Shown here piece after piece: positions 10,507 to 47,310 of a stretch of DNA of 64,000 nt. Source of the DNA: Vicugna vicugna (Eukaryota); the NCBI GenBank assembly GCA_013265495.1, contig MU062239.1, forward strand, positions 1,365,860 to 1,429,859. The letters run 5' to 3'. Within the stretch, counting starts at the first letter, position 1. Every line of letters begins with the position of its first letter. A program made the position numbers and the translations under genes. The notes under the pieces were generated by a model. It saw nothing but the letters and a program-made list of their open reading frames with translations. It had not been told where the DNA came from and searched no databases.

Positions 10507-12976
10507 CTGAAAATATTTTTTCCCAGAAGTGGATTATAAACCATATAGAAAACTTATAAAAACTTCAATTACTCAAAGAGATGATACGGTTGAGGAGCTC
10601 AAGTTTTATTAAGAAAAAGAAAAATGAGGTTGTTGTAACAAAAAATTTCTGTTTTCATCAGCCAAGAAACTAGGAACGAGGGAGTGGGCCTGTGTCCTGA
10701 CTCAGAGATGGAAGAGACATGGACACTTTAACTAGATCAAGCTCCCCTCCAGGCAGGAATTCCCTGAACCAGATCCCGCTGGACAGCTGACTCCACTGTT
10801 ACGCATCTCTTACTATTTTTAAATTCTTTATATTGAGCCTAAATAGGTAATGTTTTCTATGTTTTAAAAAGCCATTTATTGGCCTATTTTTCTGTTTAGG
10901 AAGATTTCTTTTATATTCTCCTTTCTTGAACCTAAAAGAGAAACCTTTTCTCCTACATGCTAAGATAGCAGTTGCTAAAATGCTTAGTGTCCAAAGTCTT
11001 CACATTTTTGTCAGGAAGCACACCCTTGTACACACTGGTGCTCCGCATTTTCAAAAGATTCACTCAAAGAAATTGCTTCTGGAAGACTGCCTGAGGGATT
11101 TGCAGCCTATCGACTCCTTCTAGTCAGCGGCTTTAAAAGATGTTCATACAAAACAACTTCTTATGCGAAACTCCAATATACAAGTCAGATAAAAGAAGTA
11201 TTTTATCAGTAAAAGTGTATTTTATAATCTCAAATTTTAAGTACTTACTCACAAAAAATTAGACGTGAAAACAGTAAGGAAGGAAGCAAAAATCTGAAAT
11301 CAGGAGTTGTAAATACAGGTGCAGTCTCCTAGGAGCCAAACTGGTTCTATTGCTTGCTCGGGCTGCACAGCGGGGAAAGCCCCAGATTCACATACTTACG
11401 TGACCACACACGGTAAGGGGCTCCTGTGGGGTTCTTAACTGCTCGCCGTGCAGGCGGCTCTGAGGCCACCAGTCTCCAGAGCAGCACGGAGGAGGCACCT
11501 CAGGGCTACTGAGCGGGCAGCTGCAGATCGGGCCATCGCAGACGTGACCAGCCCACAATGAGGTATGTGCAGAAATTCACAGTATGCCCTGACAGGTTTT
11601 TATGGCAATTTACCACTGTCATGACATTTTTATTATAGTTTACAAAGTACTTTCTTGTGACAGGCAGAAAATGTAAACTAAAAACCAACAGAGCAAAAAA
11701 CCACCCAACCAGTCCTTCCCACAGTTTGAGCAGCTCTGCCCCAAGGTCCCCAGTGTGAGGCTCCGCCCCCGGGGCAGCGGGCCTGGGGCTTTGCTCCCTG
11801 GGAGGCCAGGCCGCAGGCTGCCACCCAGGGATGTCAGGGAGCCATAATACTTCGTATTTTGATGTAGGAATGTTTTCAAATTGTTCTCGATATTACACAA
11901 CATACTCTTTACAAAGACCCACCCGAGAAATTTCTTTCTGGCCTTAGACAATTTTTCCTTACACAATTGTTCTTTCTTTGTAAATTCTGCAATTAATCAT
12001 TCTCCTCTTTAATTGACTGTGAGGAAGCTCAGAAACAAACTGCAACCCATTCCTAATAAATCTTGTTTTCCCTTTCCTTACTTTATCCTTTCCTTTATTT
12101 TTTCCTGTGCTAAAATATCCTCATCTATATATTTTTCCTCTATTTTGTTCGATCTGTTTTTGTAAGGCATCTTAAATTCCCTATGTAACATGCATACATG
12201 AACACATGCATATATTACTAGACTTTAAAATACAAAACATCATTACAGACTGTATTATCCTAGCCTAGTAGCTCCTTTTGATGCTGACTTCCTATTCCTT
12301 GCAGTCTGAAAGCTGGGCTTAAGTCTCCTATTTGTTAGCTAGGGTAACCCCAAATTTTCCACGTGGAACCAATCTTACTCTCCCCACGGAAATGCAAGGG
12401 CACATGGAATGCGGAAGAATTGTAGAGAACACTATACGATGATGATACACCTTCCTATCTACCCTGGGGTCTGATATTTGATACTGACATTTGTAATTCC
12501 CCTTGTCACGGCTGTGTACTCATCTTAACACTGCCAAAGTTAGAACTGGTTTTATCTACAATACACATATACTATGCTCTTTTCTGAACAAATTAAAAAT
12601 AATTTTGCCAGAAAGATTTCTGATTAAGAAGCAAAACATTACAGGATCATTTGCACACAGATGCCAGAAAACCTAAGGTTCAGACATCAGGGGCCACAGT
12701 TACTAGGCTGGGCCCTCAGTCGACTTACCAAGTGCAGCCTACAGAAAACCGGCTATTTCAGGTGCCTCTGCCGGAAAGAGGGGCTAGGGTAGGGCAAACT
12801 CTTCAGAAAAAAAGACACTGGTCAAACTCAAAGTCCACCTGTCTTGTCACAAATGCTCACTCTAGTGACAGAAGGAGAGACTGGAATGTGACAGGGGCAA
12901 GGGGTCCTGAAGGACTGTATTTGAATTGTACCCTCTCACGATATCTTTTCAAAGTCAGGAATACAATTTTTCTCAC

Positions 12977-13601
12977 CTCTTTTAGTTACTTCTTCAATTT
13001 TACGGATACAACTGCTCAATTCTTTCTGGAGTTGCTGAACTTCCAGCAGGCTTCTGTGTTCACACCGGCTTTTGTGGTCACCTATCCTGGCATGTGGCTG
13101 AAGTCCTGGATCGTGAGTGGGTGGCGAATTTGGCATGGCAAGATCTGACTGTCCTGGATGAGACGTGTACAGGTATACCTTGGCACCTGAGCTGGAAATT
13201 TCTACCTTGGACGGCTGGTGGCTGCCGTGATGGACTTCCCGACTCTCTGATTCCTTTCTTTCCACCCTATGGTCAGATATTTTATGCTTAGAGTGTCCAC
13301 ATTTCTGAGAGATTTGGGGCTGACTTCTGAGATGATGTTCTTTTATATGTTCTTCAAATTGTCTTCGTTTCACATCTCTTTTGGCTAGGTGGACAGCATA
13401 GCTAAGTCTCTCTTCTGATATGACAGAAAATGAAACAGAACTGCTTAGGTCAGGACCATCTCTAAAACCCAAATCTCCACAATGGTATGACTCATTGTAT
13501 GAGTGCTTCAGTTTTTCAATTCTAATTCCATGTGGGCAAGAATAGCGGATTGCCAAGTTGCTTGAATGTGTAGGAACATTCTTATTAAACTGCAGCTGGT
13601 T
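12977..13601 (-). CDS. KIAA0753: KIAA0753 exon 3, 625 bp, [20 protein letters not shown]...KIEEVTKR
   Basis: Within ORF 12936-13628; ttttaaag| acceptor and G|gtgag donor; strong similarity to recalled human N-terminal region. Confidence 0.97.
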
Positions 13602-14799
13602 CTTTAAAAAATAAATAAAAGTAAGCACACATTAGAAAAATAACATATTGCATAGTTGGTATATGTCTATAATCAAGTTTCTAAAATCTCACCTACACAA
13701 TTAGCAGTGCTAAGAGGCATTTTCCCGCTGTACTGATAGAATCGGTCAATCTCATACACCCTTGAATGAATCACACACCCCTGGTTCTACCCTGCAATCA
13801 CCCAGTCCCCAGTATTATCCTTCTGTTTACTAACAGTATACTGAAGGCCTCCTCACAAAGTCAACATGGAAAGCTTCAAGTAGAACCAGTGAGTTCAACT
13901 GTCTGGTTATGGAATTCTGCCCTGTTTCAAAATGTCAGGTTCCAGCAAGTGATCAATACAGTTCATGAGTGCTCCTAAAAATTGCTCCACAGATGCACCA
14001 CACAGAATCTAAACCATTGACAATACTGCTTCAAGTCTCCCTGAGATTTTTCATCTAGTGGTTGGACTTTCTATCCTGCACCTAAGTGCATCTTGCTCAG
14101 AGCAGCCCACTTATACCTTCTCATGCAAGCTTTTGACAGTTATAATGACAAAAGACACAAGTTTTATTGTTCACTTAACAAATATAGGCATGTTTCCATA
14201 TTCCCACAGGTTTCATTATTTTTCACAGTTGCATTTTCTAAAATCCAATGAATGGCCTTTTCATGCTTAACCTAACTGTAACTTTCTTACTAAACATTTA
14301 GATTGTTCCAGCTTTTCCACTAATAGGAATATTACTTCAGTTAGTATCTCCATGCATTTAGTTTTTTTCTCTTTTAAAATTATTTCCTTAGGATAAATTA
14401 TCTGTTCTGGGATTACTACATCAAAGGGAGCAAACAATTCTGTGGCTTTCGGCCTGTCAATGACAGGTAAACAGCCTTAGGAGACTTGTGCCTACAAATT
14501 CAGGGAGGCCTGTGCTGTGATGCTGTTCTTGGGGACGGCCTCCCCAACTCTCATGGCTTACACAATGAAGTATGGTTATATAATCACGTGTATGAAGAGT
14601 CAGCTTAAAATAAACCTATTGTGATATAACTTAAGGAGAGTATTTTGGGGGAAAAAAGTAGTTAAAAACCTCACTAGAGGTTATGAGAGAAAAAACACGG
14701 TTACCATCTGAAGGGTGCATGGAACTTATAGCCTTAATGGAGAAAGTCTTTCCTACCAGAGTAAAATTAACCTAAAATACTTGGGGGATTTGATACAAA

Positions 14800-17711: not shown

Positions 17712-17971
17712 NNNNNNNNNNNNNNNNNNNNNNNNNNNNNNNNNNNNNNNNNNNNNNNNNNNNNNNNNNNNNNNNNNNNNNNNNNNNNNNNNNNNNNNNN
17801 NNNNNNNNNNNNNNNNNNNNNNNNNNNNNNNNNNNNNNNNNNNNNNNNNNNNNNNNNNNNNNNNNNNNNNNNNNNNNNNNNNNNNNNNNNNNNNNNNNNN
17901 NNNNNNNNNNNNNNNNNNNNNNNNNNNNNNNNNNNNNNNNNNNNNNNNNNNNNNNNNNNNNNNNNNNNNNN
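17712..17971. other. Assembly gap (260 N); further N runs at 19090-19244, 19348-19357 and 19755-19885
   Basis: Direct reading; all gaps lie in or beside young L1/SINE sequence, as expected for short-read assembly or masking. Confidence 0.95.
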
Positions 17972-19680
17972 AAATGGTCACACTGCCCAAGGCAATCTAC
18001 AGATTTAATGCAATCCCTATCAAATTACCCAGGACATATTTCACAGAACTAGAACAAATCATAATAAAATTTATATGGAACCACAAAAGACCTAGAATTG
18101 CCAAAGCATTACTGAAGAAAAAGAAAGAGGCTGGAGGAATAACTCTCCTAGACTTCAGACAACACTACAGAGCTACAGTCATCAAGACAGCATGGTATTG
18201 GTACAAAAACAGACATATGGACCAATGGAACAGAATAGAGAGCCCAGAAATGAACCCACAAACTTTTGGTCAACTCATCTTCGACAGAGGAGGCAAGAAT
18301 ATACAATGGAATAAAGATAGCCACTTCAGCAAATGGTGTGGGGAAAACTGGACAGCAGCATGTAAAGCAATGAAGCTAGAACACTCCCTTACACCATACA
18401 CAAAAATAAACTCAAAATGGATCAAAGACTTAAACATAAGGCAAGATACAATAAACCTCCTAGAAGAAAATATACGCAAAACATTATCTCACATACATCT
18501 CAAAAATGTTCTCCTAGGGCAGTCTACCCAAGCAATAGAAATAAAAGCAGGAATAAACAAATGGGACCTAATGAAACTTACAAGCTTCTGCACAGCAAAG
18601 GAAACCATAAGTAAAACAAAACGACAACCTACGGAATGCGAGAAAATTTTTGCAAACGATGAAACCAACAAAGGCTTTATCTCCAGAATATATAAGCAGC
18701 TCATATGACATAATAAGCAAAAAACAAACCACCCAATCCAAAAATGGGCAGAAGATCTAAACAAGCAATTCTCCAAGAAGAAATGATCAATAGGCACATG
18801 AAAAAATACTCAGTATCGCTCATTATCAGAGAAATGCAAATCAAAACTATGATGAGGTATATCACCTTACACCAGTCAGAATGGCCATCATTCAAAAGTC
18901 CACAAATGACAAATGCTGCAGAGGCTGTGGAGAAATGGGAACCTTCCTACACTGCTGGTGGGAATGCAGTTTGGTGCAGCCACTGTGGAAAACAGTATGG
19001 AGATTCCTCAAAAGACTAGGAATAGACTTATCATATGACCCAGGAATCCTACTCCTGGGCATATATCCAGAAGGAACCCTACTTCAAAANNNNNNNNNNN
19101 NNNNNNNNNNNNNNNNNNNNNNNNNNNNNNNNNNNNNNNNNNNNNNNNNNNNNNNNNNNNNNNNNNNNNNNNNNNNNNNNNNNNNNNNNNNNNNNNNNNN
19201 NNNNNNNNNNNNNNNNNNNNNNNNNNNNNNNNNNNNNNNNNNNNTTGCAGCAACATGGATGTTCCTGGAGAATGTCATTCTAAGTGAAGTAAGCCAGAAA
19301 GAGAAAGAAAAATACCATATCAGATCACTCAGATGTGGAATCTTTAANNNNNNNNNNAAAAAAAGAACATAAATACAAAACAGAAACAGACTCATAGACA
19401 TAGAATACAAACTTGTGGTTGCCAAGGGGGCGGGAGTGGGAAGGGACAGACTGGAATTTCAAAATTTGTAGACACTGACAGGCATATGCAGAACAGATAA
19501 ACAAGATTATACTATATAGCACAGGGAAATATACGTAAGATCTTGTGGTAGCTCACAGTGGAAAAAAATGTGACAAAGAATATATGCATGTTCATGTATA
19601 ACTGAAAAATTGTGCTCTACACTGGAATTTGACACAACATTGTAAAATGACAATAACTCAATAAAAAATGTTAAAAAAAG
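17972..19680 (+). mobile_element. Young but inactivated L1: 3' part of ORF2 plus 3' UTR, antisense in KIAA0753 intron 2
   Basis: ORF 17974-18708 ([16 protein letters not shown]...[10 protein letters not shown]...) is typical L1 ORF2; premature TGA at 18706-18708 and later frameshifts; C-terminal Cys/His motif ([18 protein letters not shown]) in 18881-19089. Confidence 0.97.
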
Positions 19681-19688
19681 AGTATCTC

Positions 19689-19754
19689 GAGGGAGGGTAT
19701 AGCTCAAATGGTAGAGCGCATGCTTAGAATGCATGAGGTCCTGGGTTCAATCCC
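19689..19754 (+). mobile_element. tRNA-derived camelid SINE (Vic-1-like), head only, rest in gap
   Basis: gggagggtatagctcaaatggtagagcgcatgcttagaatgcatgaggtcctgggttcaatccc: A and B boxes; same family as 29366-29492 and 47125-47310. Confidence 0.85.
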
Positions 19755-19885
19755 NNNNNNNNNNNNNNNNNNNNNNNNNNNNNNNNNNNNNNNNNNNNNN
19801 NNNNNNNNNNNNNNNNNNNNNNNNNNNNNNNNNNNNNNNNNNNNNNNNNNNNNNNNNNNNNNNNNNNNNNNNNNNNNNNNNNNNN

Positions 19886-20830: not shown

Positions 20831-21175
20831 GAAGAAAAGATATTTTGGGTGAAGCTGAATAAAGACTGGCTATCAGATAATATCAGGGAATTATTTTTTG
20901 TCCATTTTCTTAGGTGTGATAATGGTATTACGGTTAAGCTGGAGAGTTTATTTTCACAAACAATAGTCTAAAATAGATGTGACATGTCACCTGCAACTTA
21001 CTTTGAGATGGTTCTGCAAAAATTTTAGAGCAATGGGAAGACAGAAAAACAGATGGGACAAATTGCTAACAAGTGTTAAACCTAAAAGGTGTTTTAAAAG
21101 GTGCTCATTGTCCTTTTCTTTGTTTGAAATGCCTCAACAAAACTCAAAATAAAGAGAAAAACAAAATGAAAATAC

Positions 21176-21268
21176 CTGGGTCTGAAGTTTCCCGGGGTCA
21201 CTCCTCCCATCCAGTTGGACACTAGATGCTGGATGAACGCAGGCTGAGGCTGGCCTGCCTGGTCCCAT
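21176..21268 (-). CDS. KIAA0753: KIAA0753 exon 2 coding part, 93 bp, [31 protein letters not shown]; whole exon 21176-21336
   Basis: ATG at 21268 with -3A/+4G; CAG|gtatt donor; acceptor ctttctttgattttag| at 21336 (alternative AG at 21323); matches recalled human N-terminus. Confidence 0.93.
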
Positions 21269-21333
21269 TATGTCAGAGTGTAGAACAACAGTGAAAGCTT
21301 AGTCATCGGCCAACTGTTCTTCCCTAAAATCAT
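21268..21333 (-). other. 21-codon uORF ([21 protein letters not shown]) whose TAA shares its last base with the KIAA0753 ATG
   Basis: Read directly: GCA ATG ATT TTA ... CTG ACA TAA TG G; depends on use of the 21336 acceptor (a 12-codon version from the ATG at 21306 exists with either acceptor). Confidence 0.7.
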
Positions 21334-22912
21334 TGCCTAAAATCAAAGAAAGTACCTTCAGACCAATGGTATACAAAGGGAAACAGTAAGTAAAATACAA
21401 TGCTATGCTCATACATCAGTATTCTAGCAGTCCACAGCAACCTCACACTACAGAGCGAATGCTTAAACAGGTACGTAAGTTTCTTTCATTTACAATAGCA
21501 ACTACACTTTTGAAATTCAACCTTCCAAGAGAACAGGGGAACACACTATTTTAACGACTACCTCTTGAGCCTTTTTCATTCCAAATTTCAAATCTCAGGG
21601 GCCACCAGTTAAGATTTTATTCCAAAAACAGAGGTCCACTACGATACACTAGCACTTTCTAGCAAGGGAGTTTTATAGATACACAGCCTACGTTAATAAA
21701 TCTTAACTACTAATCAAAAAGCAGCATGCTTTACCTTTCTAGATAGCTCAAAAGGATAGAACTCTGAATGGCTCTAAGTAAACCTGCGGCATCAGAATTC
21801 CTAGACTGATGCCAGGAACTGCCATTAACTAGCTGAATGACCTCTATACATCTTCGATTTCCCCCCAAATGCCCCTCACCATATATTCACACACAGTGTT
21901 CAACAGATAAGTGTTCCGTAAACTACACACAAAACAGCGCCTCTCCCTACTCTGAACACCTGCTCACAGACACTATTACTATCCCTGCACTCACACACTT
22001 GCTCACATTGTTATTTACCTATTTCACGGGTATCTGTCTCATCTTCCCAGCTAGACAAGGTTCCTTGAGGGTAAGGGCCTTGTCTTGCTCGTCTCTGAGA
22101 TTTCCCACAACACAGTGCTTTGAGTATAGTTGACAAATTTAACTCAACATTCGTCGACTTAAGCAGATTTTCCATAAACTGACTAGTGTTACACGTATGG
22201 GAGAATTTGTCGTCTTTAAGAATCCCATAGGAACTCAACTGAGAAATTCAGGTTTAAAAAAAAAAATCCCTAACTTAAGCTTTCAAATAAACCCAAGGTT
22301 TGCAGACTGGATTTGCTTTAAGATTGATACATCTGTAGGAATATAAAGGCAGTGTCCAAGATTCCTTATTTCTAAGGCTGCAGAGAGATGATCAAAGGCG
22401 AAGACGGGAGGAGGCACATTGAGTGAGGCAATCCCAAATAGCCTGACTTCACCACAGTTCCGGGGCTGGGGCCGCAGAATGAAGGAGCCTGCAGGGTTGG
22501 TGCCAGGGCGTCTGCGACTTTTATGTGGTCATCCCTTTCCCTCTGGATGCCAAAGGCCTAACAGTCCATTCTCCAATAGGAAAAACCCCGGTGATCCCCA
22601 CAATTCCAGGATACCTCGAGTGAGGCTACACACACACACAAACACAAACACACACAAAGTCCAGGGACACCCACCCTGAACTGTTCCCCTATACAAAGTC
22701 CTGGGACAGCCCTCTCCTTGCAGCCTGTCCCTTTCCCACTGCTCCAGGAAATCTCCCAATTTGCTACCCCACATACTGTGAGGCTTCTCCACGCCGTATC
22801 TCTCCGCCCCATCCTAAGACACCCTCCAGCCTGTGCCTTCATCTACAACCCAGGACAAATCTCCCCCCAACCTCTTCCCCCCCAGAGCCCCAGGATCCTC
22901 ACAACTTGTGCC

Positions 22913-25900
22913 CTACATATACTCCTGGAACACCCCTGTCAATCTGTCCTCCCCCTCATAATTTTCTCCCAAGTTGTCCCCCCTCACTCTGACTCCAGAC
23001 CCTTCCCCAGTCTGTCTCCTCCCACTCTGCTGTGCATGCTGTCCGAAATGGCCAATGCCTGTTTCCCCCCTTGAATCCGGGGGCACATCCTCAGATTCAT
23101 TCAATCCCACAGCCATGCTTGTCCCGGACACTCCTGGCACATTCTCAGGGTCTGGTTCTTCCCCTACAGACCTTCGACAGCTCCATAACCTGGTCCCGCG
23201 CCCACAAGTGTAAGACACCCCGACTGCCTGGCTCCTCCCTGCCAGGCCCAGGAAACTTCTACCTCCCGACTCCCCGACTAAAGCCCCAGGGCCCTCTGTG
23301 GACTGTCTCCTCGCCACGGCGCAGCCTGAGACCGCCGCGTTCGTTTCTTCTGCGCACCCAGTCACCCACACTGCGGCAGGCCCACGCCCCGCCGTGGGAA
23401 CCCCTCCAGCTGCAAGCACCCTCCCAGACAGAGGGACCCTCACAGCCTCGGGGACAGCTCCATTGGGTCTCCTTCTCCACAGACCTGCGACACCTTCAGA
23501 GCCAGTGTTCCCGTCCATGGGTCCTGAAGCCCCGGCAGCCATGGGCACCTCAGTCCCCTGTCTCCTTCCCCACATACCTGAGCCATCCCCAGAGCTACCA
23601 TGGCCCACCAGCGGCCCGGGAACCCCAGCAGCTGTGGGGACCCTTGCAGCCATGAGAACACCAGCAGTCACTGGCGCCTCAGCAGCCTGCCTTCTTCCCA
23701 ATAAGCCCAAGAGAGCCCCAGAGGGCACCTCTTCCCCCACAGGCCTGGGCACCCCCGCAGTTGTGCGCAGCCCCATGGCCACAGGTGCTCCTGTGGTCTG
23801 TCTCCCTCCTGCCCAGTCTGAGATGCCTCCAGGGCCCAGCTTTTCCCCCACGGGCCCAGGCACCCTGAGAGTGGCAGGCACCCCCATCCTGGTGGGACCC
23901 TTGGCATCTGCAGGTCCCCACACTGTCTCTCTCTCCCCCCACAAGCCTGAGACATCTCCAGAACCAGCCGCCTCTCGCACAGGCCTAGGTGCCCTGAGAG
24001 CCACAGGCAGCCCGGCAGCTACAGACACTCCTGCTGTCACAGGTACCCCTGGAGTTGCTCTCCTTCCCGGCAAGTGTGAGAAACCCCCAGAGCCAGTCTC
24101 TGTCCCTAGCGGATCCGGCACCCTAGGAGCGGCGGGCACCTCAGCAGCCACAGGGACCCTGGTATTGTGTCTCCTTCCCCAAGACCCTGGGACAGCCCCA
24201 GAGCCCATCTCCTCACCCCCCAGCCCTGGAACCTCAGGGGCCACAGGAACCCTGTCAGTCACAGGAACCCCAATAGCCGGTCTCCTTCCCCATGATCCTG
24301 GGAAGGCCTCAGAACCAGCATCTTCCCCTACAGACCATAGCTCCTTGGGAGCCATGGGAATCCCTGAAGCCATGGCTCTCCTGGCAGTATGAACCCTTCC
24401 CCACAGGCTCAAGTCATCCCTGGAGCTGTTCCCCTGACACGCGGAGCCAGGCACCCACCCAGCAGCAGGCACCCGGACAGGTACTCTTCCAGACCCCGGC
24501 ACACCCACAGCCGTGGGCACCCCTGCTGGGGCACACCTGCGTTTGGGTACACCTGCTGCCTCTGACCTCCCCCCTGTCTCTGACAACACCACAGCCTGTC
24601 TCTTTCTACACAGACACAAAGCATCCCCATAGCTAGTCTCTTGAGCCACAGATCCAGTTCCTCCTAAAGCTGTAGGCACCAGAGCCTCTTGCTCCCCCAT
24701 TGCCTGCCTCCTTTCCCACAGACTTAAGATATTTCCACTGCATGTCTCCTCTCGGATAACCCCCGGCACCGCCTCAGCCAGAGGAACCCCCAGAGCCTGC
24801 CGCCTGCCCCACGAGCCTGGGAGACCATCATAGCCTGTCTGTCCTCCCATGGCTCCTGGAACCACCACAGCCTGGGCCACTCCCATGGGCTGTTCTGTCC
24901 CCCACAGACCCGGGACACTCCCACAGCCTGTCTCCTTCCCCAAAGCCCCAGCTACCCCCACAGGTCGTCCTGTCCCCCACAGGCCTGGGGCGTCCCCAGC
25001 ACCTGCCTCCTGCTCTTCAGGACCAGATACCTCTGCAGTCTGTACGGCTTCCCATGACCCCGAGTCACCTCCAGAGCCTGTCTCTACCCACACTGCCTGT
25101 CCCCTTTCCCTGAATCCCGGGTCACCCCCACATCTCATTCTTTCTCCAATAGCACAAGGTACCCCAACAGGCTGTCTCGTGCCCCACGGGCTAGGGAGAC
25201 TCCCAGGGCCTGTCTCCTCTACAGCTGGTCTCATCTGCCACACAACTGGGGCACCCACAGAGGTAGCTTCCTCCTCCATAGTTCTGAATACCCCTCTAGC
25301 ATCAGGCACTGCTGCGGCCTGCTCCCTCGCCCGTAAGCCTGGGGTATCCCCACAGACTGCCTCCTGTGCCAGTGCCCCAGGCACCTGCACTGACTGCTCT
25401 CTCTCCCAGAGACCTGGGGCACCACCACAGCCCAGCTCTCCCTCCACAGCTCTGGGTACCTCCACAACCTCGGGCCACCCCATGGTCCCAGGCACTCCCC
25501 TAGTTGCTCCTTTTCCCCAAGAGCCTGGGGCAACCCCACAGCCTATCCCTTCCACAGCTCCAGGCACCCCTGCAACCTGCCCTCTCCCTAGCAGGTGTGG
25601 GGCAATCCCAGAATTTGCCTCCATAGTCCCAGGCACGGTCACAGCCCAACCCTGCCCACACAGGCCTGAGGCCCTCTCATAGCCTGCCTCTTGGGAACGA
25701 GCTATTGACACCCCTGTGGCCCGGGGGAATGCCCTAGCCTGTCCTTTCACCCACGGTCCAGTAAGACCACCACGGCTGGTTTCTACCCACGAAGCCTGGC
25801 CAGGGACCCCCCTTTCAACAGGGCCCCCTCCTGCAGGCATAGGATGGAGCTCGACCCTGCTTCCTTCTCCACAACCTGAAGCTGCCCTCATAGCCTGCAC

Positions 25901-26416
25901 CTTCAACCATAGTTCCAGAATGCTCTCATGCCCCATAGACCCCGGGCGGCCTTTTCTCTCGCAGCCCCGGGGGCTCCTATAAACCATCTCCTCCTCCCCA
26001 GTGCCAGTCGCCCACACAGAGCCGACAGGCCCCACCACCTGGGGTTCCCCCACAGCCCCGTTCACCCACACAGCCCCAGAGTCCCTTGCGGCCTCCACAG
26101 AGCGTGCAGTGCCAGGTGTCCCCGCAGCCTCATTCACCCCGGCGGCCTGGGCTGTCCCTTCCGCTTGTCTTCTCCCCCACGGCCGCCTACAGTCCTGCAG
26201 CCTTTCTGCGCCCACACAGCGCGCCTCCCGCACCAAGGATCTCTCCCGGCGCCTCGCCCCACGGCTTTGGGACGTCCCTGCACCGCATCTCTTCCCCCAC
26301 GGCCGCCGGACTCCTCGCCCGGACCTGCTGGGCCCCACGCAGCGGCCGGGCGCCTCTGACGCTAGCTCGCCCCCGCGCAGCCCGGGCAAGGCCCCGCGGC
26401 CAGCCGCCCTGCTCAT
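22913..26416 (-). CDS. Uncharacterised 1167 aa Gly/Ala/Val/Pro/Arg-rich repeat protein, single-exon ORF nested in KIAA0753 intron 1
   Basis: Stop-free frame 26512-22913; first ATG at 26416, strong-context ATG at 25987; about 30 Trp codons; recurring PGxWGRRQ motif at mostly 25+6n aa spacing; the other five frames are repeatedly interrupted. Confidence 0.7.
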   Translation of the reverse strand: MSRAAGRGALPGLRGGELASEAPGRCVGPSRSGRGVRRPWGKRCGAGTSQSRGARRRERSLVREARCVGAERLQDCRRPWGRRQAEGTAQAAGVNEAAGTPGTARSVEAARDSGAVWVNGAVGEPQVVGPVGSVWATGTGEEEMVYRSPRGCERKGRPGSMGHESILELWLKVQAMRAASGCGEGSRVELHPMPAGGGPVERGVPGQASWVETSRGGLTGPWVKGQARAFPRATGVSIARSQEAGYERASGLCGQGWAVTVPGTMEANSGIAPHLLGRGQVAGVPGAVEGIGCGVAPGSWGKGATRGVPGTMGWPEVVEVPRAVEGELGCGGAPGLWEREQSVQVPGALAQEAVCGDTPGLRAREQAAAVPDARGVFRTMEEEATSVGAPVVWQMRPAVEETGPGSLPSPWGTRQPVGVPCAIGERMRCGGDPGFRERGQAVWVETGSGGDSGSWEAVQTAEVSGPEEQEAGAGDAPGLWGTGRPVGVAGALGKETGCGSVPGLWGTEQPMGVAQAVVVPGAMGGQTGYDGLPGSWGRRQALGVPLAEAVPGVIREETCSGNILSLWERRQAMGEQEALVPTALGGTGSVAQETSYGDALCLCRKRQAVVLSETGGRSEAAGVPKRRCAPAGVPTAVGVPGSGRVPVRVPAAGWVPGSACQGNSSRDDLSLWGRVHTARRAMASGIPMAPKELWSVGEDAGSEAFPGSWGRRPAIGVPVTDRVPVAPEVPGLGGEEMGSGAVPGSWGRRHNTRVPVAAEVPAAPRVPDPLGTETGSGGFSHLPGRRATPGVPVTAGVSVAAGLPVALRAPRPVREAAGSGDVSGLWGERETVWGPADAKGPTRMGVPATLRVPGPVGEKLGPGGISDWAGGRQTTGAPVAMGLRTTAGVPRPVGEEVPSGALLGLLGRRQAAEAPVTAGVLMAARVPTAAGVPGPLVGHGSSGDGSGMWGRRQGTEVPMAAGASGPMDGNTGSEGVAGLWRRRPNGAVPEAVRVPLSGRVLAAGGVPTAGRGPAAVWVTGCAEETNAAVSGCAVARRQSTEGPGALVGESGGRSFLGLAGRSQAVGVSYTCGRGTRLWSCRRSVGEEPDPENVPGVSGTSMAVGLNESEDVPPDSRGETGIGHFGQHAQQSGRRQTGEGSGVRVRGDNLGENYEGEDRLTGVFQEYM

Positions 26417-26821
26417 AGCCCCAGGACGACTCCCGCCTTCCCAGCGCAGCTCCGGGGCACTTTCTGTTTTAGCACCAGCTCCCAAGGAGGCTCCACACAC
26501 CCACTCACACACTCAGCTCCAGCTCTCGCAGCCTTCCTCAGTCCCAGCCCCCTACCCCCGCCCAGTCCTGGACGCCCGCCCCCTACTGGTCCCGGCCCCC
26601 ACCCCCACCAAGCCCTGGCAGGAGAAAAGGTAAATAGGCCCGACGAGCGGAAGGATCTGCCCCGGCTCAAGGTCTCCTCTACCCCAGGTCCATGACTCCT
26701 AGCGCAGCTTCCCAGAATCCCCCCAGCTCTGGCCCGAGCCCACCTGGCCTGGGGCGCGGCGCGGCTACCCGGAACCGGGCAGGGGGGCCGCAACTAGGCC
26801 TCGCTTCCGGCCGCTCGCCCA

Positions 26822-26835
26822 GTCGCCATGGCAAC
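26822..26835. promoter_or_regulatory. RFX X-box GTCGCCATGGCAAC
   Basis: 13 of 14 match to the palindromic X-box GTTGCCATGGCAAC, inside the promoter CpG island of a ciliopathy gene. Confidence 0.75.
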
Positions 26836-26877
26836 GGGCGCAAGGCAGCTTGGGAGCCGTTAAGGCTCCAAAGTCAC

Positions 26878-27060
26878 CTAAAGGTCCAGGGACTGCGTAG
26901 CGGTAGGCTTTACAGCCACTGCTTATGGGGCTGGGGCCAGGACCAGTTTGGGGCAGAAGCCAGGGTTTTAGGTGCAGCCAGCACGGGAAGACCTGCGAAA
27001 CGGAGCAGAATGACGGCACGGAGGAGTTACGACCATCAGAGGCTCCCGTAGCACCCCAGC
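26878..27060 (-). other. KIAA0753: Putative non-coding exon 1 of KIAA0753 (5' limit uncertain)
   Basis: Donor TAG|GTGACT at 26878/26877 in the CpG island; exon 2 has an acceptor upstream of its ATG, so an upstream exon is needed. Confidence 0.5.
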
Positions 27061-27182
27061 GCCTGGCTGGTTCCCTCAGGCCCCGCCCACCCGGAAACAG
27101 CTTCGCCCCGCCCTGCGTGGGGTCACTCCCCGCGGCAGCGTGACCCAAGAACACCTCCCGCGGTTCCAGTAGCGCGCTCCGG

Positions 27183-27327
27183 ATGGCCGGCTACAAGGAG
27201 GTGAGTGTCGCCGGCTACGAGGACTTCATGCAGGCTGTGGAGCAGCACAATGGCAAGACCGTATTCGCCTACTTTTCCGGTTCTAAGGACGCCGAAGGGA
27301 AAAGCTGGTGCCCGGACTGCGTGCAGG
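27183..27327 (+). CDS. TXNDC17: TXNDC17 (TRP14) exon 1, MAGYKEVSV...KSWCPDCVQ, contains the WCPDC active site
   Basis: ATG at 27183, G|gtgagt donor; WCPDC is the TRP14 redox motif. Confidence 0.97.
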
Positions 27328-27896
27328 GTGAGTCCGCGATTCGGGGGTTGCTGCCCAGAGGAAGTGGCAGGAGGCCGAGGCTATGGCCAGAGAGCAGGGT
27401 GGGGAAGAAGCGGAAGGGAGACTTCTTGCTCCGGGAGTTCCAGGGGGCGATCTGAGCTATCATCTTGCCTTTCCCTACCCTGTTCCCGACTCTCCTCCTG
27501 TCTTTCTCCGCCCCGCCGAAAGTGCTTTTCTACTGTTCGACCCACGTAATCCTGGAATCTAGTTCTTTAAACCTTTTTCATTTCTCCAGTATGATTAGTG
27601 TCTTACAGAAGACGTGAGTTGATTTCCTTTAGTTAAGTCAGCAAATATTTGTCTTTCATTGTTAAAGGCGCTGTGGCGCGGGGACAAATCGGGACTGAGT
27701 TCGTCTTTACCCTTAAAGTGACTCTCAAATCAGGAAAAAAAAAAAAACAAAAACCCGATTTCTGTTAACTTACTCAGTTAACTCCAGGTTAAAGTCTGAG
27801 TACTACCAAGACCGAGGAGAGGGAAGAGGGACGCTGTTTATCAGTACCTGACTGTAGAATTGGGGTGTAATTATTTTTATCAACTTTTCTTGAAAG

Positions 27897-27978
27897 CTGA
27901 ACCAGTCGTACGAGAGGGGCTGAAGCATGTTGGTGAAGGATGTGTGTTCATCTACTGCCAAGTAGGAGAAAAACCTTA
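27897..27978 (+). CDS. TXNDC17: TXNDC17 exon 2, 82 bp, (A)[26 protein letters not shown](Y)
   Basis: tcttgaaag| acceptor and |gtaagt donor; phase-consistent. Confidence 0.95.
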
Positions 27979-28397
27979 GTAAGTGGCAACGTGTATTCTG
28001 TTTCCCAGACATGCACTAGACTCTTGCAGACTTAGGCGAGAATGGCCTGGGATTCAGGTTGATTTCTAAGGTATAGTCGGGTAAGTTAAATAAGTAGAAG
28101 ATATTAAATTCAAACTAAAAATTTGAATGTTCAGCCATTTGTATTAGTTAAGGGTAATTCAGTGAATTTGGCCTGATGTTAGTCCAGAACTTAACTGTCT
28201 TCAAATTTATTTTATATCTTAGCATATATTCACTTAAATGAAAACTTTGCACAGGAGAATAAGGGATAAGTCATACTCAAGGTTTTCAAAATGTTTACAA
28301 CAATGAATACTAAAAGACTAAATTATACCCAACATTAAGCAAACTGTAAGAAACCAAATAAATGTTTTTCACGATCATCTTTTTTTTCTTTTAATAG

Positions 28398-29365: not shown

Positions 29366-29492
29366 CTTTTGTTTTATGAGAGGGAGGTAATTGGGTTTAT
29401 TTATTTATATTTGGAGGAGGTACTGGAGATTGAACCCAGGACCTCCTGCATGCTAAGCATGCGCTCTACCACTTGAGCTATACCCTGCCCCC
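29366..29492 (-). mobile_element. tRNA-derived camelid SINE (Vic-1-like)
   Basis: Reverse complement gggggcagggtatagctcaagtggtagagcgcatgcttagcatgcaggaggtcctgggttcaatc; imperfect TSD taata(t/c)atggac(t/a)tttt at 29349 and 29493. Confidence 0.88.
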
Positions 29493-35989: not shown

Positions 35990-36062
35990 CACTATGAATT
36001 GCAACTCTTCTGTCAAAAATCATTAATTACTACTCAATTCAATGAGGTGCTCGACAACTTAC

Positions 36063-36140
36063 AATTAAGGTAATTTGGGTTGGCCAAACACTGCACAAAT
36101 TCCAACTCCAACTGAAACCGAAGTCGATTTCCAGCATCGT
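36063..36140 (-). CDS. MED31: MED31 exon 2, 78 bp, (D)DAGNRLRFQLELEFVQCLANPNYLN
   Basis: ttttctcctag| acceptor and |gtaagt donor; hallmark RFQLELEFVQCLANPNYL motif. Confidence 0.97.
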
Positions 36141-36986
36141 CTAGGAGAAAAGATAGCAAAAACCATCCAAAATAAACTACTGTATATAATACTGATTTGT
36201 AGCAAGAAAACAGTAGTAAAGACACCTGACTAATGCTGAGATACATTTCCACATAAAAGAAGGGCATGGGTTGGTTTTCCTAAACTGGACGTGGGAGGAG
36301 AAAAACCTTCCTTAGAAGTCTAAGAAAAGCAAAGCCTTGATTAAAAGGAATAACTCAGACGTTTCTCTAAAGTTAAAGAGAAGTCATCAAAGAAAACAAG
36401 AATACACTCGTTTTCATAAGCCACTATGTAGGGATTTTAACAGCGATCACTGGAATAGGTTGTGGTAACTACGCTTTCCCGTATTTTAATAATGTGTTAC
36501 AAGTTGTTAAGCGATTAAGTTAAGCAGAAACAAAGGGAATGAATGCTAAATTCATCAAGAAAAAGTTCAGAATGCAAGCTGAAAGGGACTACGGCGAGTA
36601 CTGAAGATCAAGGAGCGTGTGCTCAGGTGAGTAGCGTCAGTGGCAGACTAATACACAAGTCTGTCGACGATATTGAAAACTTCTGCAAGCTCATATGAGA
36701 CGCAGAAAACACATGGAGGCAGTTTAAGATAAAAATCCTCTCCCTTAGTTTCGCCGAAAGCCGTCGGTGTTTGAATAGCAAGTGAGGAAAAAGGAAATGA
36801 CCACAAACCAAACTCTGAAGAAGCCAAACCACCTGTGCTCTTCCAGACACTAGAAGAGATGCCCCAGTCTGAACTCTCGCCCAGCCGAGAGTTAGGCCTA
36901 GGAGGAGACCCCGGGGAAGCGGAAACAGGTGTCTGAACCCAGGACAGTTCTACTCGCGAAGAAGCGCGGCTCCGGGTGTTACTCAC

Positions 36987-37014
36987 CTGTCTCCATAGCG
37001 ACGGCCGCGGCCAT
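36987..37014 (-). CDS. MED31: MED31 exon 1 coding part, MAAAVAMET
   Basis: ATG at 37014; G|gtgagt donor at 36987/36986. Confidence 0.93.
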
Positions 37015-37834
<820 letters not shown>

Positions 37835-38488
37835 GATGCTTCCTTTCCTGGGGCCCTGAGAGGTCCGTGGCCCTTGGCCAGGGCAGAATTGCAGCCAGTT
37901 CGAAGGCAGCCTGCTGCCAGATGGGCCCATCATCTTTGGTTTCCTGGAAACGGTCCACAAATCAATGTGAGAAAAAGCCAAGATGCGGTTTCGGGATTCA
38001 GCCAACATTCATTGACCCTGCTGCACCTTGGACCATCCTGCCTTTGACCCAATGAACTATTTTAACTTGAAGCCACCGCAAAAAAAGTTTTCAGGCCCTA
38101 GATACTGTGTAAATTGAGTTGATGGACGTAGAGGCTGTTTGAACCTCTGACCCAGGTGAGTTTTGGATTCTTAGCCCCCTGAATGACTTTCGCTGCTTCA
38201 AATTTAGGGACAGGCAGCAAGCCGAAATCATGACTGGTGGAATGATTGTATACCTACCGAAAACTGAGGGGCAAAGAACAGGCTTTTCTTAATTAACTAG
38301 TTGGCTTTTGTTTATGTTTCAGAATAAGCAGTTCTTTGTGCTAAGCCGTTGTGCATGGCAGCCCCAGCCACATATGTTTTAACATAGGCCAAATGTAGGT
38401 CAAAATGAAAAATGAAGGTCCACATCAGGAATCAAGAATAGTCTTAAAAGGGAATCTTGACCTGTGATTCGAGGAGGTGCAGGGGAGG

Positions 38489-47124: not shown

Positions 47125-47310
47125 GGGGAGGGTATAGCTCAAAGTGGCAGAGCACATGCTTAGCATGCACAAGGTCCTAGGTTCAATCCCCAGCACCTCC
47201 TCTTAAAAAAAAAAAAAGGAAATAAATAAATAAACCTGATTACTTCCTTCCCCCTGACACACACACACACGCACACATGCACACATGCACACGCACACGC
47301 ACAAGCAAAC
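47125..47310 (+). mobile_element. tRNA-derived camelid SINE (Vic-1-like) with (CA)-expanded tail
   Basis: A/B-box head; 16 bp TSD aaaaatgattat(t/g)gta at 47107-47122 and 47311-47326. Confidence 0.9.

What the first reader, a model, noticed from the sequence alone, without database searches (positions are those of the whole stretch)
23300..25480. Hierarchical 25+6n amino-acid repeat grammar in the nested ORF
Seen: the motif G-E-E-x-G-(S/C)-G-x-x-P-G-(L/S)-W-G-R-R-Q recurs. Counting between Trp-equivalent positions gives 25, 25, 31, 31, 37, 37, 43, 43, 37, 43, 31 residues (one unit counted 36; not every unit was counted). This is a 25 aa core plus 0-3 inserted hexapeptides of type (A/T)AGVP(x). 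Unit lengths change in whole codons while the DNA units are highly diverged. Inference: old tandem expansion under frame constraint, giving a sticker-and-spacer design (Trp/Arg stickers, elastin-like GVP spacers) that could suit condensate formation or multivalent scaffolding.
Basis: partly seen in the sequence, partly recalled or inferred. Interest (0 to 1): 0.7.

Follow-up and report, generated by a model that had tools for sequence, protein, structure and literature searches.

The report
Conserved disordered Trp-repeat protein gene
The repeat pattern is real: it is the body of an unstudied 1,167-residue, probably unfolded protein found in all placental mammals examined, encoded just upstream of the centriole gene KIAA0753 and built from about 21 copies of a 19-residue tryptophan/arginine motif, each followed by 0 to 5 six-residue Val-Pro spacers.

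Summary
On the minus strand, 22916-26416 is a 1,167-codon ORF. It holds about 21 copies of a 19-residue core (P-x-G-E-E-T-G-S-G-G-x-P-G-L-W-G-R-R-Q), each followed by 0-5 hexapeptides (A/T)-x-(G/R/E)-V-P-x. 18 of 20 Trp-to-Trp spacings equal 1 mod 6 (P about 1e-12).

It is a real gene:
- Full-length orthologues occur across placental mammals in fixed synteny (TXNDC17, this ORF, KIAA0753).
- dN/dS is about 0.45, and 0.1-0.2 in a conserved N-terminal domain.
- 44 of 44 indels are in frame, against 12/71 and 10/35 in the flanks.

The mouse orthologue is RefSeq LOC122526781 (Gm43951 is inferred to be its Ensembl name), uncharacterised. I found no paper, Pfam family, solved structure or non-placental relative. 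AlphaFold2 predicts disorder (mean pLDDT 34) apart from one conserved helix.

The array was complete before the placental radiation and shows no concerted evolution. Third codon positions are almost as alike between units as first and second positions, so much of the grammar is a fossil of DNA amplification (57 + 18n nt). Only anchor residues show clear selection.

The sticker-and-spacer reading fits composition and predicted disorder but is untested. Gene and grammar: high confidence. Function: inferred.

The parts
22916..26416 (-). Coding sequence of the repeat protein: 1,167 codons, with stop TAG at 22913-22915. The ATG at 26414-26416 is the start shared with the orthologues.
   Evidence: zero stops in this frame against 8-53 in the other five frames in five species
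26126..26416 (-). Arg-rich N-terminal region (residues 1-97; 22 R+K against 8 D+E in the first 100). It holds two degenerate R-R-P-W-G-(K/R)-R motifs and has no hydrophobic signal-peptide segment.
25733..26104 (-). Strongly conserved N-domain (residues 105-228). It has 28 invariant columns in 41 species and is itself built from degenerate units (V-W-V-N-G, S-W-V-E-T-S-R-G-G-L-T-G-P-W).
   Evidence: dN/dS 0.10-0.23
25877..25921 (-). The only confidently predicted secondary-structure element: an amphipathic helix I-L-E-L-W-L-K-V-Q-A-M-R-A-A-S (residues 166-180).
   Evidence: AF2 block pLDDT about 75 in the full-length run and 50-65 in the domain-only run
23225..25561 (-). Repeat array (residues 286-1064): about 21 units of a 19-residue core plus 0-5 hexapeptides.
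24701..25561 (-). N-half unit subfamily: core ends W-G-x-G-Q, position 8 is often Cys, spacers are short (spacings mostly 19-31, two of 37 and 49).
23462..24334 (-). C-half unit subfamily: core G-E-E-T-G-S-G-G-x-S-G-L-W-G-R-R-Q-T, spacers are long (spacings 31-43).
22916..23224 (-). C-terminal tail (residues 1065-1167). It is conserved to the last residues in the orthologues.
   Evidence: dN/dS 0.4-0.8
26001..28000 (.). CpG island (CpG o/e 0.55-0.79) between the ORF start and TXNDC17. It is taken to be the bidirectional promoter. The repeat body itself is 62-66% G+C but CpG-poor (o/e 0.20-0.26).
27183..27282 (+). Start of the TXNDC17 coding sequence, head to head with the ORF and 767 bp from its ATG.
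   Evidence: Pfam TXD17-like on the cattle, warthog, elephant and Apodemus neighbours
21095..21268 (-). First coding exon of KIAA0753 (moonraker, MNR), on the same strand. Its ATG is at about 21268, roughly 1.65 kb downstream of the ORF stop.
12939..13628 (-). A large internal KIAA0753/MNR exon, which confirms the identity of the downstream gene.
   Evidence: Pfam PF15718 MNR, E = 1.4e-113

Best explanation
The repeats are the body of a genuine protein-coding gene with an intronless 1,167-codon ORF, restricted to placental mammals as far as the databases show. It is the orthologue of mouse LOC122526781 (RefSeq); Gm43951 is inferred to be the same gene's Ensembl name. It sits on the same strand as KIAA0753, between the CpG-island promoter shared with TXNDC17 and the first KIAA0753 coding exon.

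Shown:
- The protein has an Arg-rich head, a strongly conserved 120-residue N-domain with one amphipathic helix, about 21 units of a 19-residue core plus k hexapeptides, and a conserved tail.
- The array was complete before the placental radiation.
- It is inherited unit by unit, without concerted evolution.
- It is kept open by purifying selection.

Inferred, origin: the array arose by in-frame DNA amplification of a 57-nt module carrying a variable number of 18-nt sub-repeats, on the lineage leading to placentals. The synonymous distance between units is about 1.1, against 0.76 between the window species and a murid.

Inferred, mode of action: the protein is a long flexible chain. Its regularly spaced modules (Glu-Glu, ten residues, then Trp-Gly-Arg-Arg) are weak reiterated contact sites. 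The Val-Pro hexapeptides are elastin-like spacers. The conserved N-domain helix gives a specific anchor. Together these make a multivalent scaffold for self-association or for gathering many copies of a partner.
For: Evidence that it is a real gene:
- 65 full-length relatives, all from placental mammals, including Afrotheria and Xenarthra.
- Conserved synteny MED31, TXNDC17, ORF, MNR in cattle, warthog, elephant and Apodemus.
- dN/dS of 0.44-0.51 overall and 0.10-0.23 in the N-domain.
- 44 of 44 indels in frame, against 12/71 and 10/35 in the flanks.
- Between orthologues, codon position 3 diverges about 1.5 times faster than positions 1 and 2.
- A RefSeq NP_ entry in mouse, and a UniProt entry filed under the Kiaa0753 orthologue 4933427D14Rik.

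Grammar.

Ancient and not homogenised.

DNA-level ancestry of the units:
- Fourfold-degenerate sites are 0.46 identical between units, against 0.32 expected from codon usage, with column-specific codons.
- Between paralogous units dS = 1.09 and dN/dS = 0.55.

Disorder: mean pLDDT 34, with 1,140 of 1,167 residues below 50; the N-domain alone gives pLDDT 39.

Sticker-like composition is conserved in 63 orthologues: W 2.0-3.3%, F+Y 0.6-2.0%, R 7-11%, K 0.3-2.2%. Core columns 4-5 are Glu and columns 17-18 are Arg.
Against: - There is no direct evidence of translation, location or self-association.
- Transcript evidence here is second-hand. Gm43951 appears in two mouse RNA-seq gene lists, and equating it with this gene rests on a UniRef name given to a hamster orthologue. 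The public contigs I fetched are collinear with the genome, so they are uninformative.
- Constraint on the repeats is weak. dN/dS is about 0.5, and codon positions 1 and 2 diverge about as fast as the flanking non-coding DNA.
- Core columns are only slightly better conserved than spacer columns (0.66 against 0.61).
- One- to three-residue indels in the spacers are tolerated, so the six-residue quantisation is not strictly maintained by selection.
- G, A, P, R and V richness is also what a G+C-rich sequence gives by default.
Confidence: 0.6

Rival explanations
1. The reiterated Trp motif is a ligand platform for one specific partner that has tryptophan-binding pockets. This is the way the WG/GW repeats of GW182/TNRC6, NRPE1 and SPT5L bind Argonautes. 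On this view it is not a self-associating sticker.
For: About 20-30 Trp lie in a predicted disordered, fast-evolving tandem array. The Trp columns are among the best kept in the core (0.73). Many individual Trp are present in 70-95% of 41 species. Plant WG/GW platforms likewise conserve little beyond the Trp context (PMC2910046).
Against: Only 32% of Trp are next to a Gly in the orthologues. That is roughly what the Gly content alone would give (my own arithmetic from the composition, about 31-34%). The composition is V/A/P/R-rich with N at 1.1% and L at 5%. WG/GW domains are G/S/N/D/E-rich and L/M/C-poor. Basic residues follow the Trp. No homology was found.
Confidence: 0.15
2. The repeats are mainly a fossil that now serves as a long entropic tether or bulk spacer. 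On this view, function resides in the conserved N-domain and C-tail. Length and disorder matter; the motif does not.
For: The N-domain has dN/dS of 0.1-0.2, against about 0.5 in the repeats. Non-anchor core columns have dN/dS of 0.85 between units. Core columns are hardly better conserved than spacer columns. Rodents and carnivores have lost whole units; their proteins are 890-980 residues.
Against: The Trp, Pro-Gly, Arg-Arg and Glu-Glu columns are kept in most units and most species. Aromatic residues are almost exclusively Trp, and Arg outnumbers Lys by about eight to ten to one, in all 63 orthologues. A pure spacer would not need that.
Confidence: 0.2
3. The frame is kept open for a cis-regulatory reason and the peptide is irrelevant. 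It would be translated as a giant upstream ORF, or as an intron-retaining isoform, that tunes KIAA0753 expression.
For: The ORF lies in the 5' region of KIAA0753, on the same strand. No conserved poly(A) signal lies between its stop and the first MNR exon. UniProt files the mouse protein under the Kiaa0753 orthologue. A ruminant gene model splices codons 68-1071 out.
Against: The amino-acid sequence of the N-domain is under strong constraint (dN/dS 0.1-0.2, with 28 invariant columns). The C-tail is conserved. No regulatory upstream ORF needs 1,100 codons.
Confidence: 0.04
4. It is a secreted matrix protein of the collagen or elastin type, as the automatic database names suggest.
For: RefSeq models are named 'collagen alpha chain'. 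The protein is Gly/Pro/Val-rich, with hexapeptides that recall elastin.
Against: There is no Pfam collagen hit. The longest Gly-X-Y run is 5 triplets. The N-terminus is Arg-rich, with a maximum hydropathy of 0.10 in the first 40 windows, so no signal peptide is apparent. Lys is 0.9%, so there are no Lys-Ala cross-link domains.
Confidence: 0.01

Closest known systems
Mouse LOC122526781 (NP_001382938.1, UniProt A0A0N4SUT6; Gm43951 / ENSMUSG00000107877 inferred to be the same gene) and the RefSeq or Ensembl models in about 60 placental species
   Same: They are orthologues: full-length alignment at 40-72% identity, the same synteny, the same N-domain and the same unit-by-unit repeat layout.
   Different: They differ only by species. 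These entries are uncharacterised, or misnamed 'collagen alpha chain' or 'mucin-19'. No description of the repeat grammar or of any function was found in the searchable literature.
WG/GW Argonaute-binding platforms (GW182/TNRC6 N-terminus, plant NRPE1 C-terminal domain, SPT5L/KTF1)
   Same: Reiterated Trp in disordered, rapidly evolving tandem repeats, giving multivalent display.
   Different: Trp-Gly adjacency is near chance level (32%). The composition is V/A/P/R-rich rather than G/S/N/D/E-rich. Arg-Arg follows the Trp. There is no sequence homology.
Tropoelastin hydrophobic domains and elastin-like polypeptides
   Same: Short Val-Pro-Gly-rich repeats, including a hexapeptide period, and predicted disorder. 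This comparison rests on my own knowledge of elastin.
   Different: No signal peptide and no Lys-Ala cross-linking domains. The hexapeptide is (A/T)-x-(G/R/E)-V-P-x and comes only in runs of 0-5 between charged Trp cores.
Sticker-and-spacer disordered regions of FUS-family and RGG proteins
   Same: Aromatic and Arg residues spaced along a Gly-rich disordered chain. This is a design class, not a homologous family; the comparison rests on my own knowledge.
   Different: The aromatic residue is Trp, not Tyr. The units are true tandem repeats with quantised spacing and a Glu-Glu patch. There is no RRM or prion-like Q/N/S/Y composition.

Membership tests
Placental orthologous group of mouse LOC122526781 (Gm43951 by inference) | Full-length sequence homology | tested here: met
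   E = 0, 40-70% BLASTP identity at mostly 73-100% coverage; alignment A1 has 58% mean column identity
Placental orthologous group of mouse LOC122526781 (Gm43951 by inference) | Position between TXNDC17 (head to head) and KIAA0753/MNR (same strand) | tested here: met
   The window is collinear with the cattle, warthog and Apodemus loci. Gene calls with Pfam hits. TXNDC17 and MNR starts mapped. MNR exon.
Placental orthologous group of mouse LOC122526781 (Gm43951 by inference) | Conserved N-domain with invariant Trp, Gly and Leu columns | tested here: met
   All 28 invariant columns are present in the window protein
WG/GW Argonaute-binding platform | Many Trp in a disordered repeat region | tested here: met
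   31 Trp; pLDDT below 50 over 98% of the chain
WG/GW Argonaute-binding platform | Trp predominantly adjacent to Gly (WG, GW, GWG) | tested here: not met
   A mean of 32% of Trp are next to Gly in 63 orthologues. My own arithmetic from the Gly content gives about 31-34% by chance.
WG/GW Argonaute-binding platform | Composition rich in G, S, N, D, E and poor in L, I, M, Y, C (PMC2910046) | tested here: not met
   G 18.6% fits, but V 10.5, A 11.9, R 9.3, P 8.5, L 5.1 and N 1.1% do not
WG/GW Argonaute-binding platform | Binds the Trp pockets of an Argonaute PIWI domain | not testable with these tools
   Needs a binding assay
Collagen (the name given by automatic annotation) | Long uninterrupted Gly-X-Y triplet repeats; Pfam PF01391 | tested here: not met
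   No Pfam hit at E up to 1; longest Gly-X-Y run is 5 triplets
Elastin / elastin-like | Signal peptide and Lys-Ala cross-linking domains alternating with hydrophobic V-P-G repeats | tested here: not met
   Arg-rich N-terminus without a hydrophobic segment; K 0.9%. Only the short Val-Pro hexapeptides resemble elastin.
Sticker-and-spacer phase-separating disordered proteins (design class) | Intrinsic disorder over most of the chain | tested here: met
   By prediction only: mean pLDDT 34
Sticker-and-spacer phase-separating disordered proteins (design class) | Aromatic and Arg residues distributed at regular intervals in Gly-rich spacers | tested here: met
   Trp every 19-49 residues; R:K about 10:1 in the window protein; Trp outnumbers Phe+Tyr by about 2:1
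Sticker-and-spacer phase-separating disordered proteins (design class) | Concentration-dependent condensation that depends on the stickers | not testable with these tools
   Needs purified protein or live-cell imaging with sticker mutants

The most novel reading that the evidence does not exclude
A 1,100-residue protein was born on the placental stem lineage. An 18-nt/57-nt module amplified in frame inside the 5' region of the centriolar-satellite gene KIAA0753. The new ORF is still expressed from the same promoter and first exon by skipping the first splice. It acts as a Trp/Arg multivalent scaffold, possibly in the same granular compartment as its host gene's product. The locus would then be a dual-output one, in which the splicing choice decides between two unrelated proteins.
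Probability: 0.15. Interest if true: 0.75.

Novelty: new variant of a known kind. Interest (0 to 1): 0.55.

Why it matters
A protein of more than 1,100 residues, kept open in every placental order examined, has no name, no family, no structure and no paper.

Its architecture is unusually legible: a fixed core plus a countable number of hexapeptide spacers, with units that can be matched one to one across about 100 million years. That makes it a natural system for asking what selection preserves in a disordered repeat protein: motif, spacing, valence or only length. It also offers a clean example of how amplification of a stop-free minisatellite can create a very long new ORF.

Its position in the 5' region of KIAA0753, a ciliopathy gene, has a practical side. 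Variants and knock-out alleles aimed at the start of KIAA0753 may also hit this gene.

Tried and rejected
- Tandem Repeats Finder on 22000-27500 found no array in the ORF.
- Pfam on the whole protein found nothing at E up to 1.
- A profile search of PDB sequences gave only a chance hit at E = 0.81.
- A profile search of 1.84 billion representative proteins gave only orthologues and fragments, with no paralogue or distant relative.
- AlphaFold2 on the N-domain alone did not give a fold (pLDDT 39). I therefore ran no structure search, because matches to such models are meaningless.
- I tried to get transcript evidence from public short contigs of cattle, an unnamed species and a Mus-like species. 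All are collinear with genomic DNA, so they say nothing about splicing or transcript ends.
- I looked for a conserved poly(A) signal downstream of the stop. The single AATAAA is not conserved.
- The Ago-hook idea was checked against published composition rules and failed on Trp-Gly adjacency and composition.
- The collagen and elastin names were rejected.
- Antisense dual coding was considered and rejected. The mirror frame has few stops (8-11) but is not open in any species.
- Literature searches for the mouse gene symbols, accessions and the locus found only gene-list mentions.
- I could not search marsupial, monotreme or other vertebrate genomes with these tools.
Full report
WHAT IS THERE

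The window is mammalian. G+C is 32-45% over most of it, with a 56-62% block at 22-28 kb. On the minus strand an ORF runs from 26512 to 22913 (1,199 codons from a GTG). All orthologues start at the ATG at 26416, giving 1,167 codons and a TAG stop at 22913-22915.

CHECKING THE OBSERVATION

I seeded a 20-residue HMM from 12 regex matches and iterated it on the protein. It finds 21-24 copies of a core with consensus P-V-G-E-E-T-G-S-G-G-x-P-G-L-W-G-R-R-Q-A.

Spacings between successive Trp-equivalent positions are 37, 25, 49, 25, 19, 25, 25, 31, 31, 36, 69, 37, 37, 37, 43, 43, 37, 43, 31, 79. Eighteen of the twenty equal 1 mod 6 (P = 1.3e-12).

One unit is only 19 residues long, and 32 of 34 species keep that length. 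The grammar is therefore best written as a 19-residue core plus k hexapeptides, with k = 0-5.

Cutting the spacers into sixes from the residue after Gln gives the consensus (A/T)-x-(G/R/E)-V-P-x. 25 of 31 spacer Val-Pro dipeptides lie in one phase relative to the preceding Trp.

The units fall into two blocks:
- An N-half subfamily, whose core ends W-G-x-G-Q, often has Cys at column 8, and has short spacers.
- A C-half subfamily, with W-G-R-R-Q-T and long spacers.

There are thus three levels: hexapeptide, unit and block. The conserved N-domain is itself made of degenerate units, for example S-W-V-E-T-S-R-G-G-L-T-G-P-W-V-K-G-Q-A.

IS IT A GENE?

Yes.
- A word-seeded search found 65 relatives of 720-1,203 residues, all from placental mammals. 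They include elephant, tenrecs, armadillo, primates, bats, ungulates, carnivores, shrews, lagomorphs and rodents.
- In cattle, warthog, elephant and Apodemus the neighbours are always MED31, TXNDC17 (opposite strand, start about 750-790 bp away), the ORF, then KIAA0753/MNR on the same strand 1.5-1.8 kb downstream.
- The window is collinear with the cattle, warthog and Apodemus loci. Here the TXNDC17 ATG is at 27183 (+), the MNR ATG is at about 21268 (-), and an MNR exon at 12939-13628 (-) matches Pfam PF15718 at 1.4e-113.
- Pairwise dN/dS among five species is 0.44-0.51 overall, 0.10-0.23 in the N-domain and 0.46-0.54 in the repeats, with dS of 0.36-0.93.
- A nucleotide alignment made without any codon guidance has 44 unique internal gaps, all multiples of three. 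The downstream and upstream flanks have 12 of 71 and 10 of 35.
- The sense frame has no stop in any of the five species. The other frames have 8-53.
- Between orthologues, codon position 3 differs at 0.24-0.44 of sites, against 0.15-0.33 for positions 1 and 2.
- The mouse protein has a RefSeq NP_ accession, 'uncharacterized protein LOC122526781'. UniProt files it under 4933427D14Rik, which I recall to be the Kiaa0753 orthologue.
- A hamster orthologue is called 'Gm43951 protein' in UniRef. I take Gm43951 (ENSMUSG00000107877) to be the Ensembl name of the mouse gene, but I did not verify this. That symbol appears only in two RNA-seq gene lists, from heart and endothelial cells.
- I found no paper about the gene or protein.

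AGE AND MODE OF ORIGIN

Orthologous units are 0.47-0.63 identical between the window and cattle, macaque, elephant, armadillo or Apodemus. Non-orthologous units are 0.27-0.33 identical. The array was therefore complete in the placental ancestor and has not been homogenised since.

The modal spacings over 41 species are 37, 25, 49, 25, 19, 25, 25, 31, 31, 36, 65, 37, 37, 37, 43, 43, 37, 44, 31, 80. This is the same grammar.

A profile of 41 orthologues, searched against 1.84 billion representative proteins of all lengths, returned 30 hits. The weaker ones I inspected are orthologues, fragments or artefacts. No paralogue or non-placental relative is visible in protein databases. I could not search non-placental genomes directly.

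Inside the window protein the 60-nt cores are on average 55% identical. This is too low for TRF. A permissive search does see them: 13-15 copies at 60-75% identity, with spacings of 75, 93, 111, 129 and 147 nt.

Third codon positions are almost as alike between units (0.51) as first and second positions (0.55, 0.58). At fourfold-degenerate sites of the same codon family, identity is 0.46 against 0.32 expected from codon usage. Columns keep their own codons (GGC at column 7, GGG at 9, GGT at 10), or their own third base even when the residue differs (NNT at column 8, NNC at 11).

Pooled over unit pairs, dS is 1.09 and dN/dS is 0.55. It is 0.38 in the anchor columns and 0.85 in the rest. I chose the anchor columns by their conservation, so that contrast is partly circular.

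My reading is that the units still carry the imprint of a DNA-level amplification. That amplification happened somewhat before the placental radiation; for comparison, dS between the window species and a murid is 0.76. Selection since then has acted mostly on the frame and on a handful of residues (Glu-Glu, the Gly residues, Pro-Gly, Trp, Arg-Arg).

Between species, the commonest multi-residue change in unit length is loss of exactly six residues: 50 species-by-unit cells, not phylogenetically independent. Changes of one to three residues are also frequent. The six-residue quantum is therefore mainly historical, with some continuing slippage. It is not a strictly enforced ruler.

WHAT THE PROTEIN LOOKS LIKE

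AlphaFold2 with the 41-sequence alignment gives a mean pLDDT of 34, with 1,140 of 1,167 residues below 50. The one confident element is a helix at residues 166-180 (I-L-E-L-W-L-K-V-Q-A-M-R-A-A-S), in the most conserved part of the N-domain. The N-domain alone does no better (pLDDT 39).

There is no Pfam match and no PDB relative.

Composition of the window protein: G 18.6, A 11.9, V 10.5, R 9.3, P 8.5 and E 7.5%. K is 0.9%. There are 31 Trp against 8 Phe and 7 Tyr. Net charge is +8 and pI is 8.6. These biases hold in 63 orthologues.

The first 100 residues carry 22 basic against 8 acidic residues and have no hydrophobic segment, so a signal peptide is unlikely.

Each unit is a small charge dipole, with Glu-Glu at columns 4-5 and Arg-Arg at columns 17-18 flanking the Trp.

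HOW IT MOST LIKELY WORKS

Shown: a conserved, translated-looking, predicted-disordered chain with regularly spaced Trp/Arg/Glu modules and Val-Pro spacers.

Inferred: a multivalent flexible scaffold in which the modules are weak reiterated contacts (cation-pi, pi-pi, Glu-Arg). The hexapeptides set spacing and add elastin-like hydrophobicity. The N-domain helix docks a specific partner.

It fits the data, but I could not test it.

Rivals:
- A Trp-pocket ligand platform like WG/GW Ago hooks. This is weakened because Trp-Gly adjacency is near chance level and the composition does not match the published rules.
- A mostly fossil entropic tether whose function lies in the N-domain and tail.
- A purely cis-regulatory giant upstream ORF of KIAA0753. 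This is contradicted by amino-acid-level constraint in the N-domain.
- A secreted collagen- or elastin-like protein, as the database names suggest. This is rejected: the longest Gly-X-Y run is 5, there is no signal peptide and almost no Lys.

RELATION TO THE HOST GENE

The ORF begins inside the CpG island shared with TXNDC17 (CpG o/e 0.55-0.79 at 26001-28000). It then runs into G+C-rich but CpG-poor sequence (o/e 0.20-0.26).

No conserved poly(A) signal lies between its stop and the first MNR exon.

A gene model in one ruminant assembly joins codon 67 to codon 1072 through a GTGAGT donor and a CAG acceptor, although the full ORF is open there too. That donor is GTGGGC in the window and GTGAAT in cattle.

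These points, together with the UniProt filing of the mouse protein under the KIAA0753 orthologue, suggest that the ORF is read from transcripts of the KIAA0753 promoter that do not splice out this region. I could not verify the transcript structure. The public contigs I retrieved are collinear with genomic DNA.

VERDICT

The evolutionary inference is supported, with one qualification: much of the grammar is inherited DNA structure rather than maintained design. The functional inference remains open.

The gene exists in databases as an uncharacterised or misnamed model. Its architecture, age and constraint pattern appear to be undescribed.

I did not fill or look up the N-masked stretches.

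Noticed in passing
L007:10001-13360 (ruminant assembly GCA_054642885.1); corresponds to window about 26216 and 23200: An annotated gene model (P0076, 115 aa) splices codon 67 directly to codon 1072 of the ORF, in frame, using a GTGAGT donor and a CAG acceptor. The full 1,119-codon ORF is also open there. The donor is GTGAGT in two species but GTGGGC in the window and GTGAAT in cattle.
   Followed up: partly
window 26417-26512 (-): The frame stays open for 32 codons upstream of the conserved ATG. A related sequence in an ENA metagenome contig (P0071, L008) has a similar extension that starts with ATG. Some species may therefore make an N-terminally longer form.
   Followed up: no
window 23298-24392 (+) and 24849-25682 (+): Long mirror ORFs (364 and 277 aa) lie on the opposite strand of the repeats. 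That antisense frame has only 8-11 stops in five species but is never fully open. It looks like a by-product of the codon bias (GNN-rich sense codons), not a second gene.
   Followed up: yes
window 22916-26416 against flanks 21300-22912 and 26417-27160: Third codon positions of the ORF diverge faster between Laurasiatherian species (0.24-0.29) than the alignable flanking non-coding DNA (0.16-0.30). First and second positions diverge about as fast as the flanks. Either the flanks (promoter, 5' intron) are themselves constrained, or the G+C-rich body mutates faster.
   Followed up: partly
window 17712-17971, 19090-19244, 19348-19357, 19755-19885: Four runs of N (556 bases) lie in a KIAA0753 intron. 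Next to them are two ORFs (17974-18708 +, 18881-19372 +) with no Pfam match.
   Followed up: no
window 29419-29484 (-), 19700-19756 (+), 47128-47201 (+): Three weak Rfam tRNA matches (30-36 bits, just above the gathering score). In a mammalian genome these are most likely tRNA-derived SINE fragments.
   Followed up: no
P0079, P0081 (protein database entries): Two fragments of this protein have Pro and Ala systematically replaced by Phe/Leu and Val. They look like translations of bisulfite-converted reads and are database artefacts, not variants.
   Followed up: no
window 36001-38000, 48001-52000, 56001-60000: Further G+C-rich blocks (55-59%) lie beyond MED31. The ORFs of 150-208 aa that I tested from these and neighbouring stretches have no Pfam match. 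I did not identify the genes there.
   Followed up: partly
orthologues P0047-P0063 (rodents), P0042 and P0046 (carnivores): Rodent and carnivore proteins are 890-1,030 residues, against 1,110-1,170 in most other orders. Nucleotide alignments show whole-unit deletions of 129-132 nt. Unit number is therefore not fixed.
   Followed up: partly
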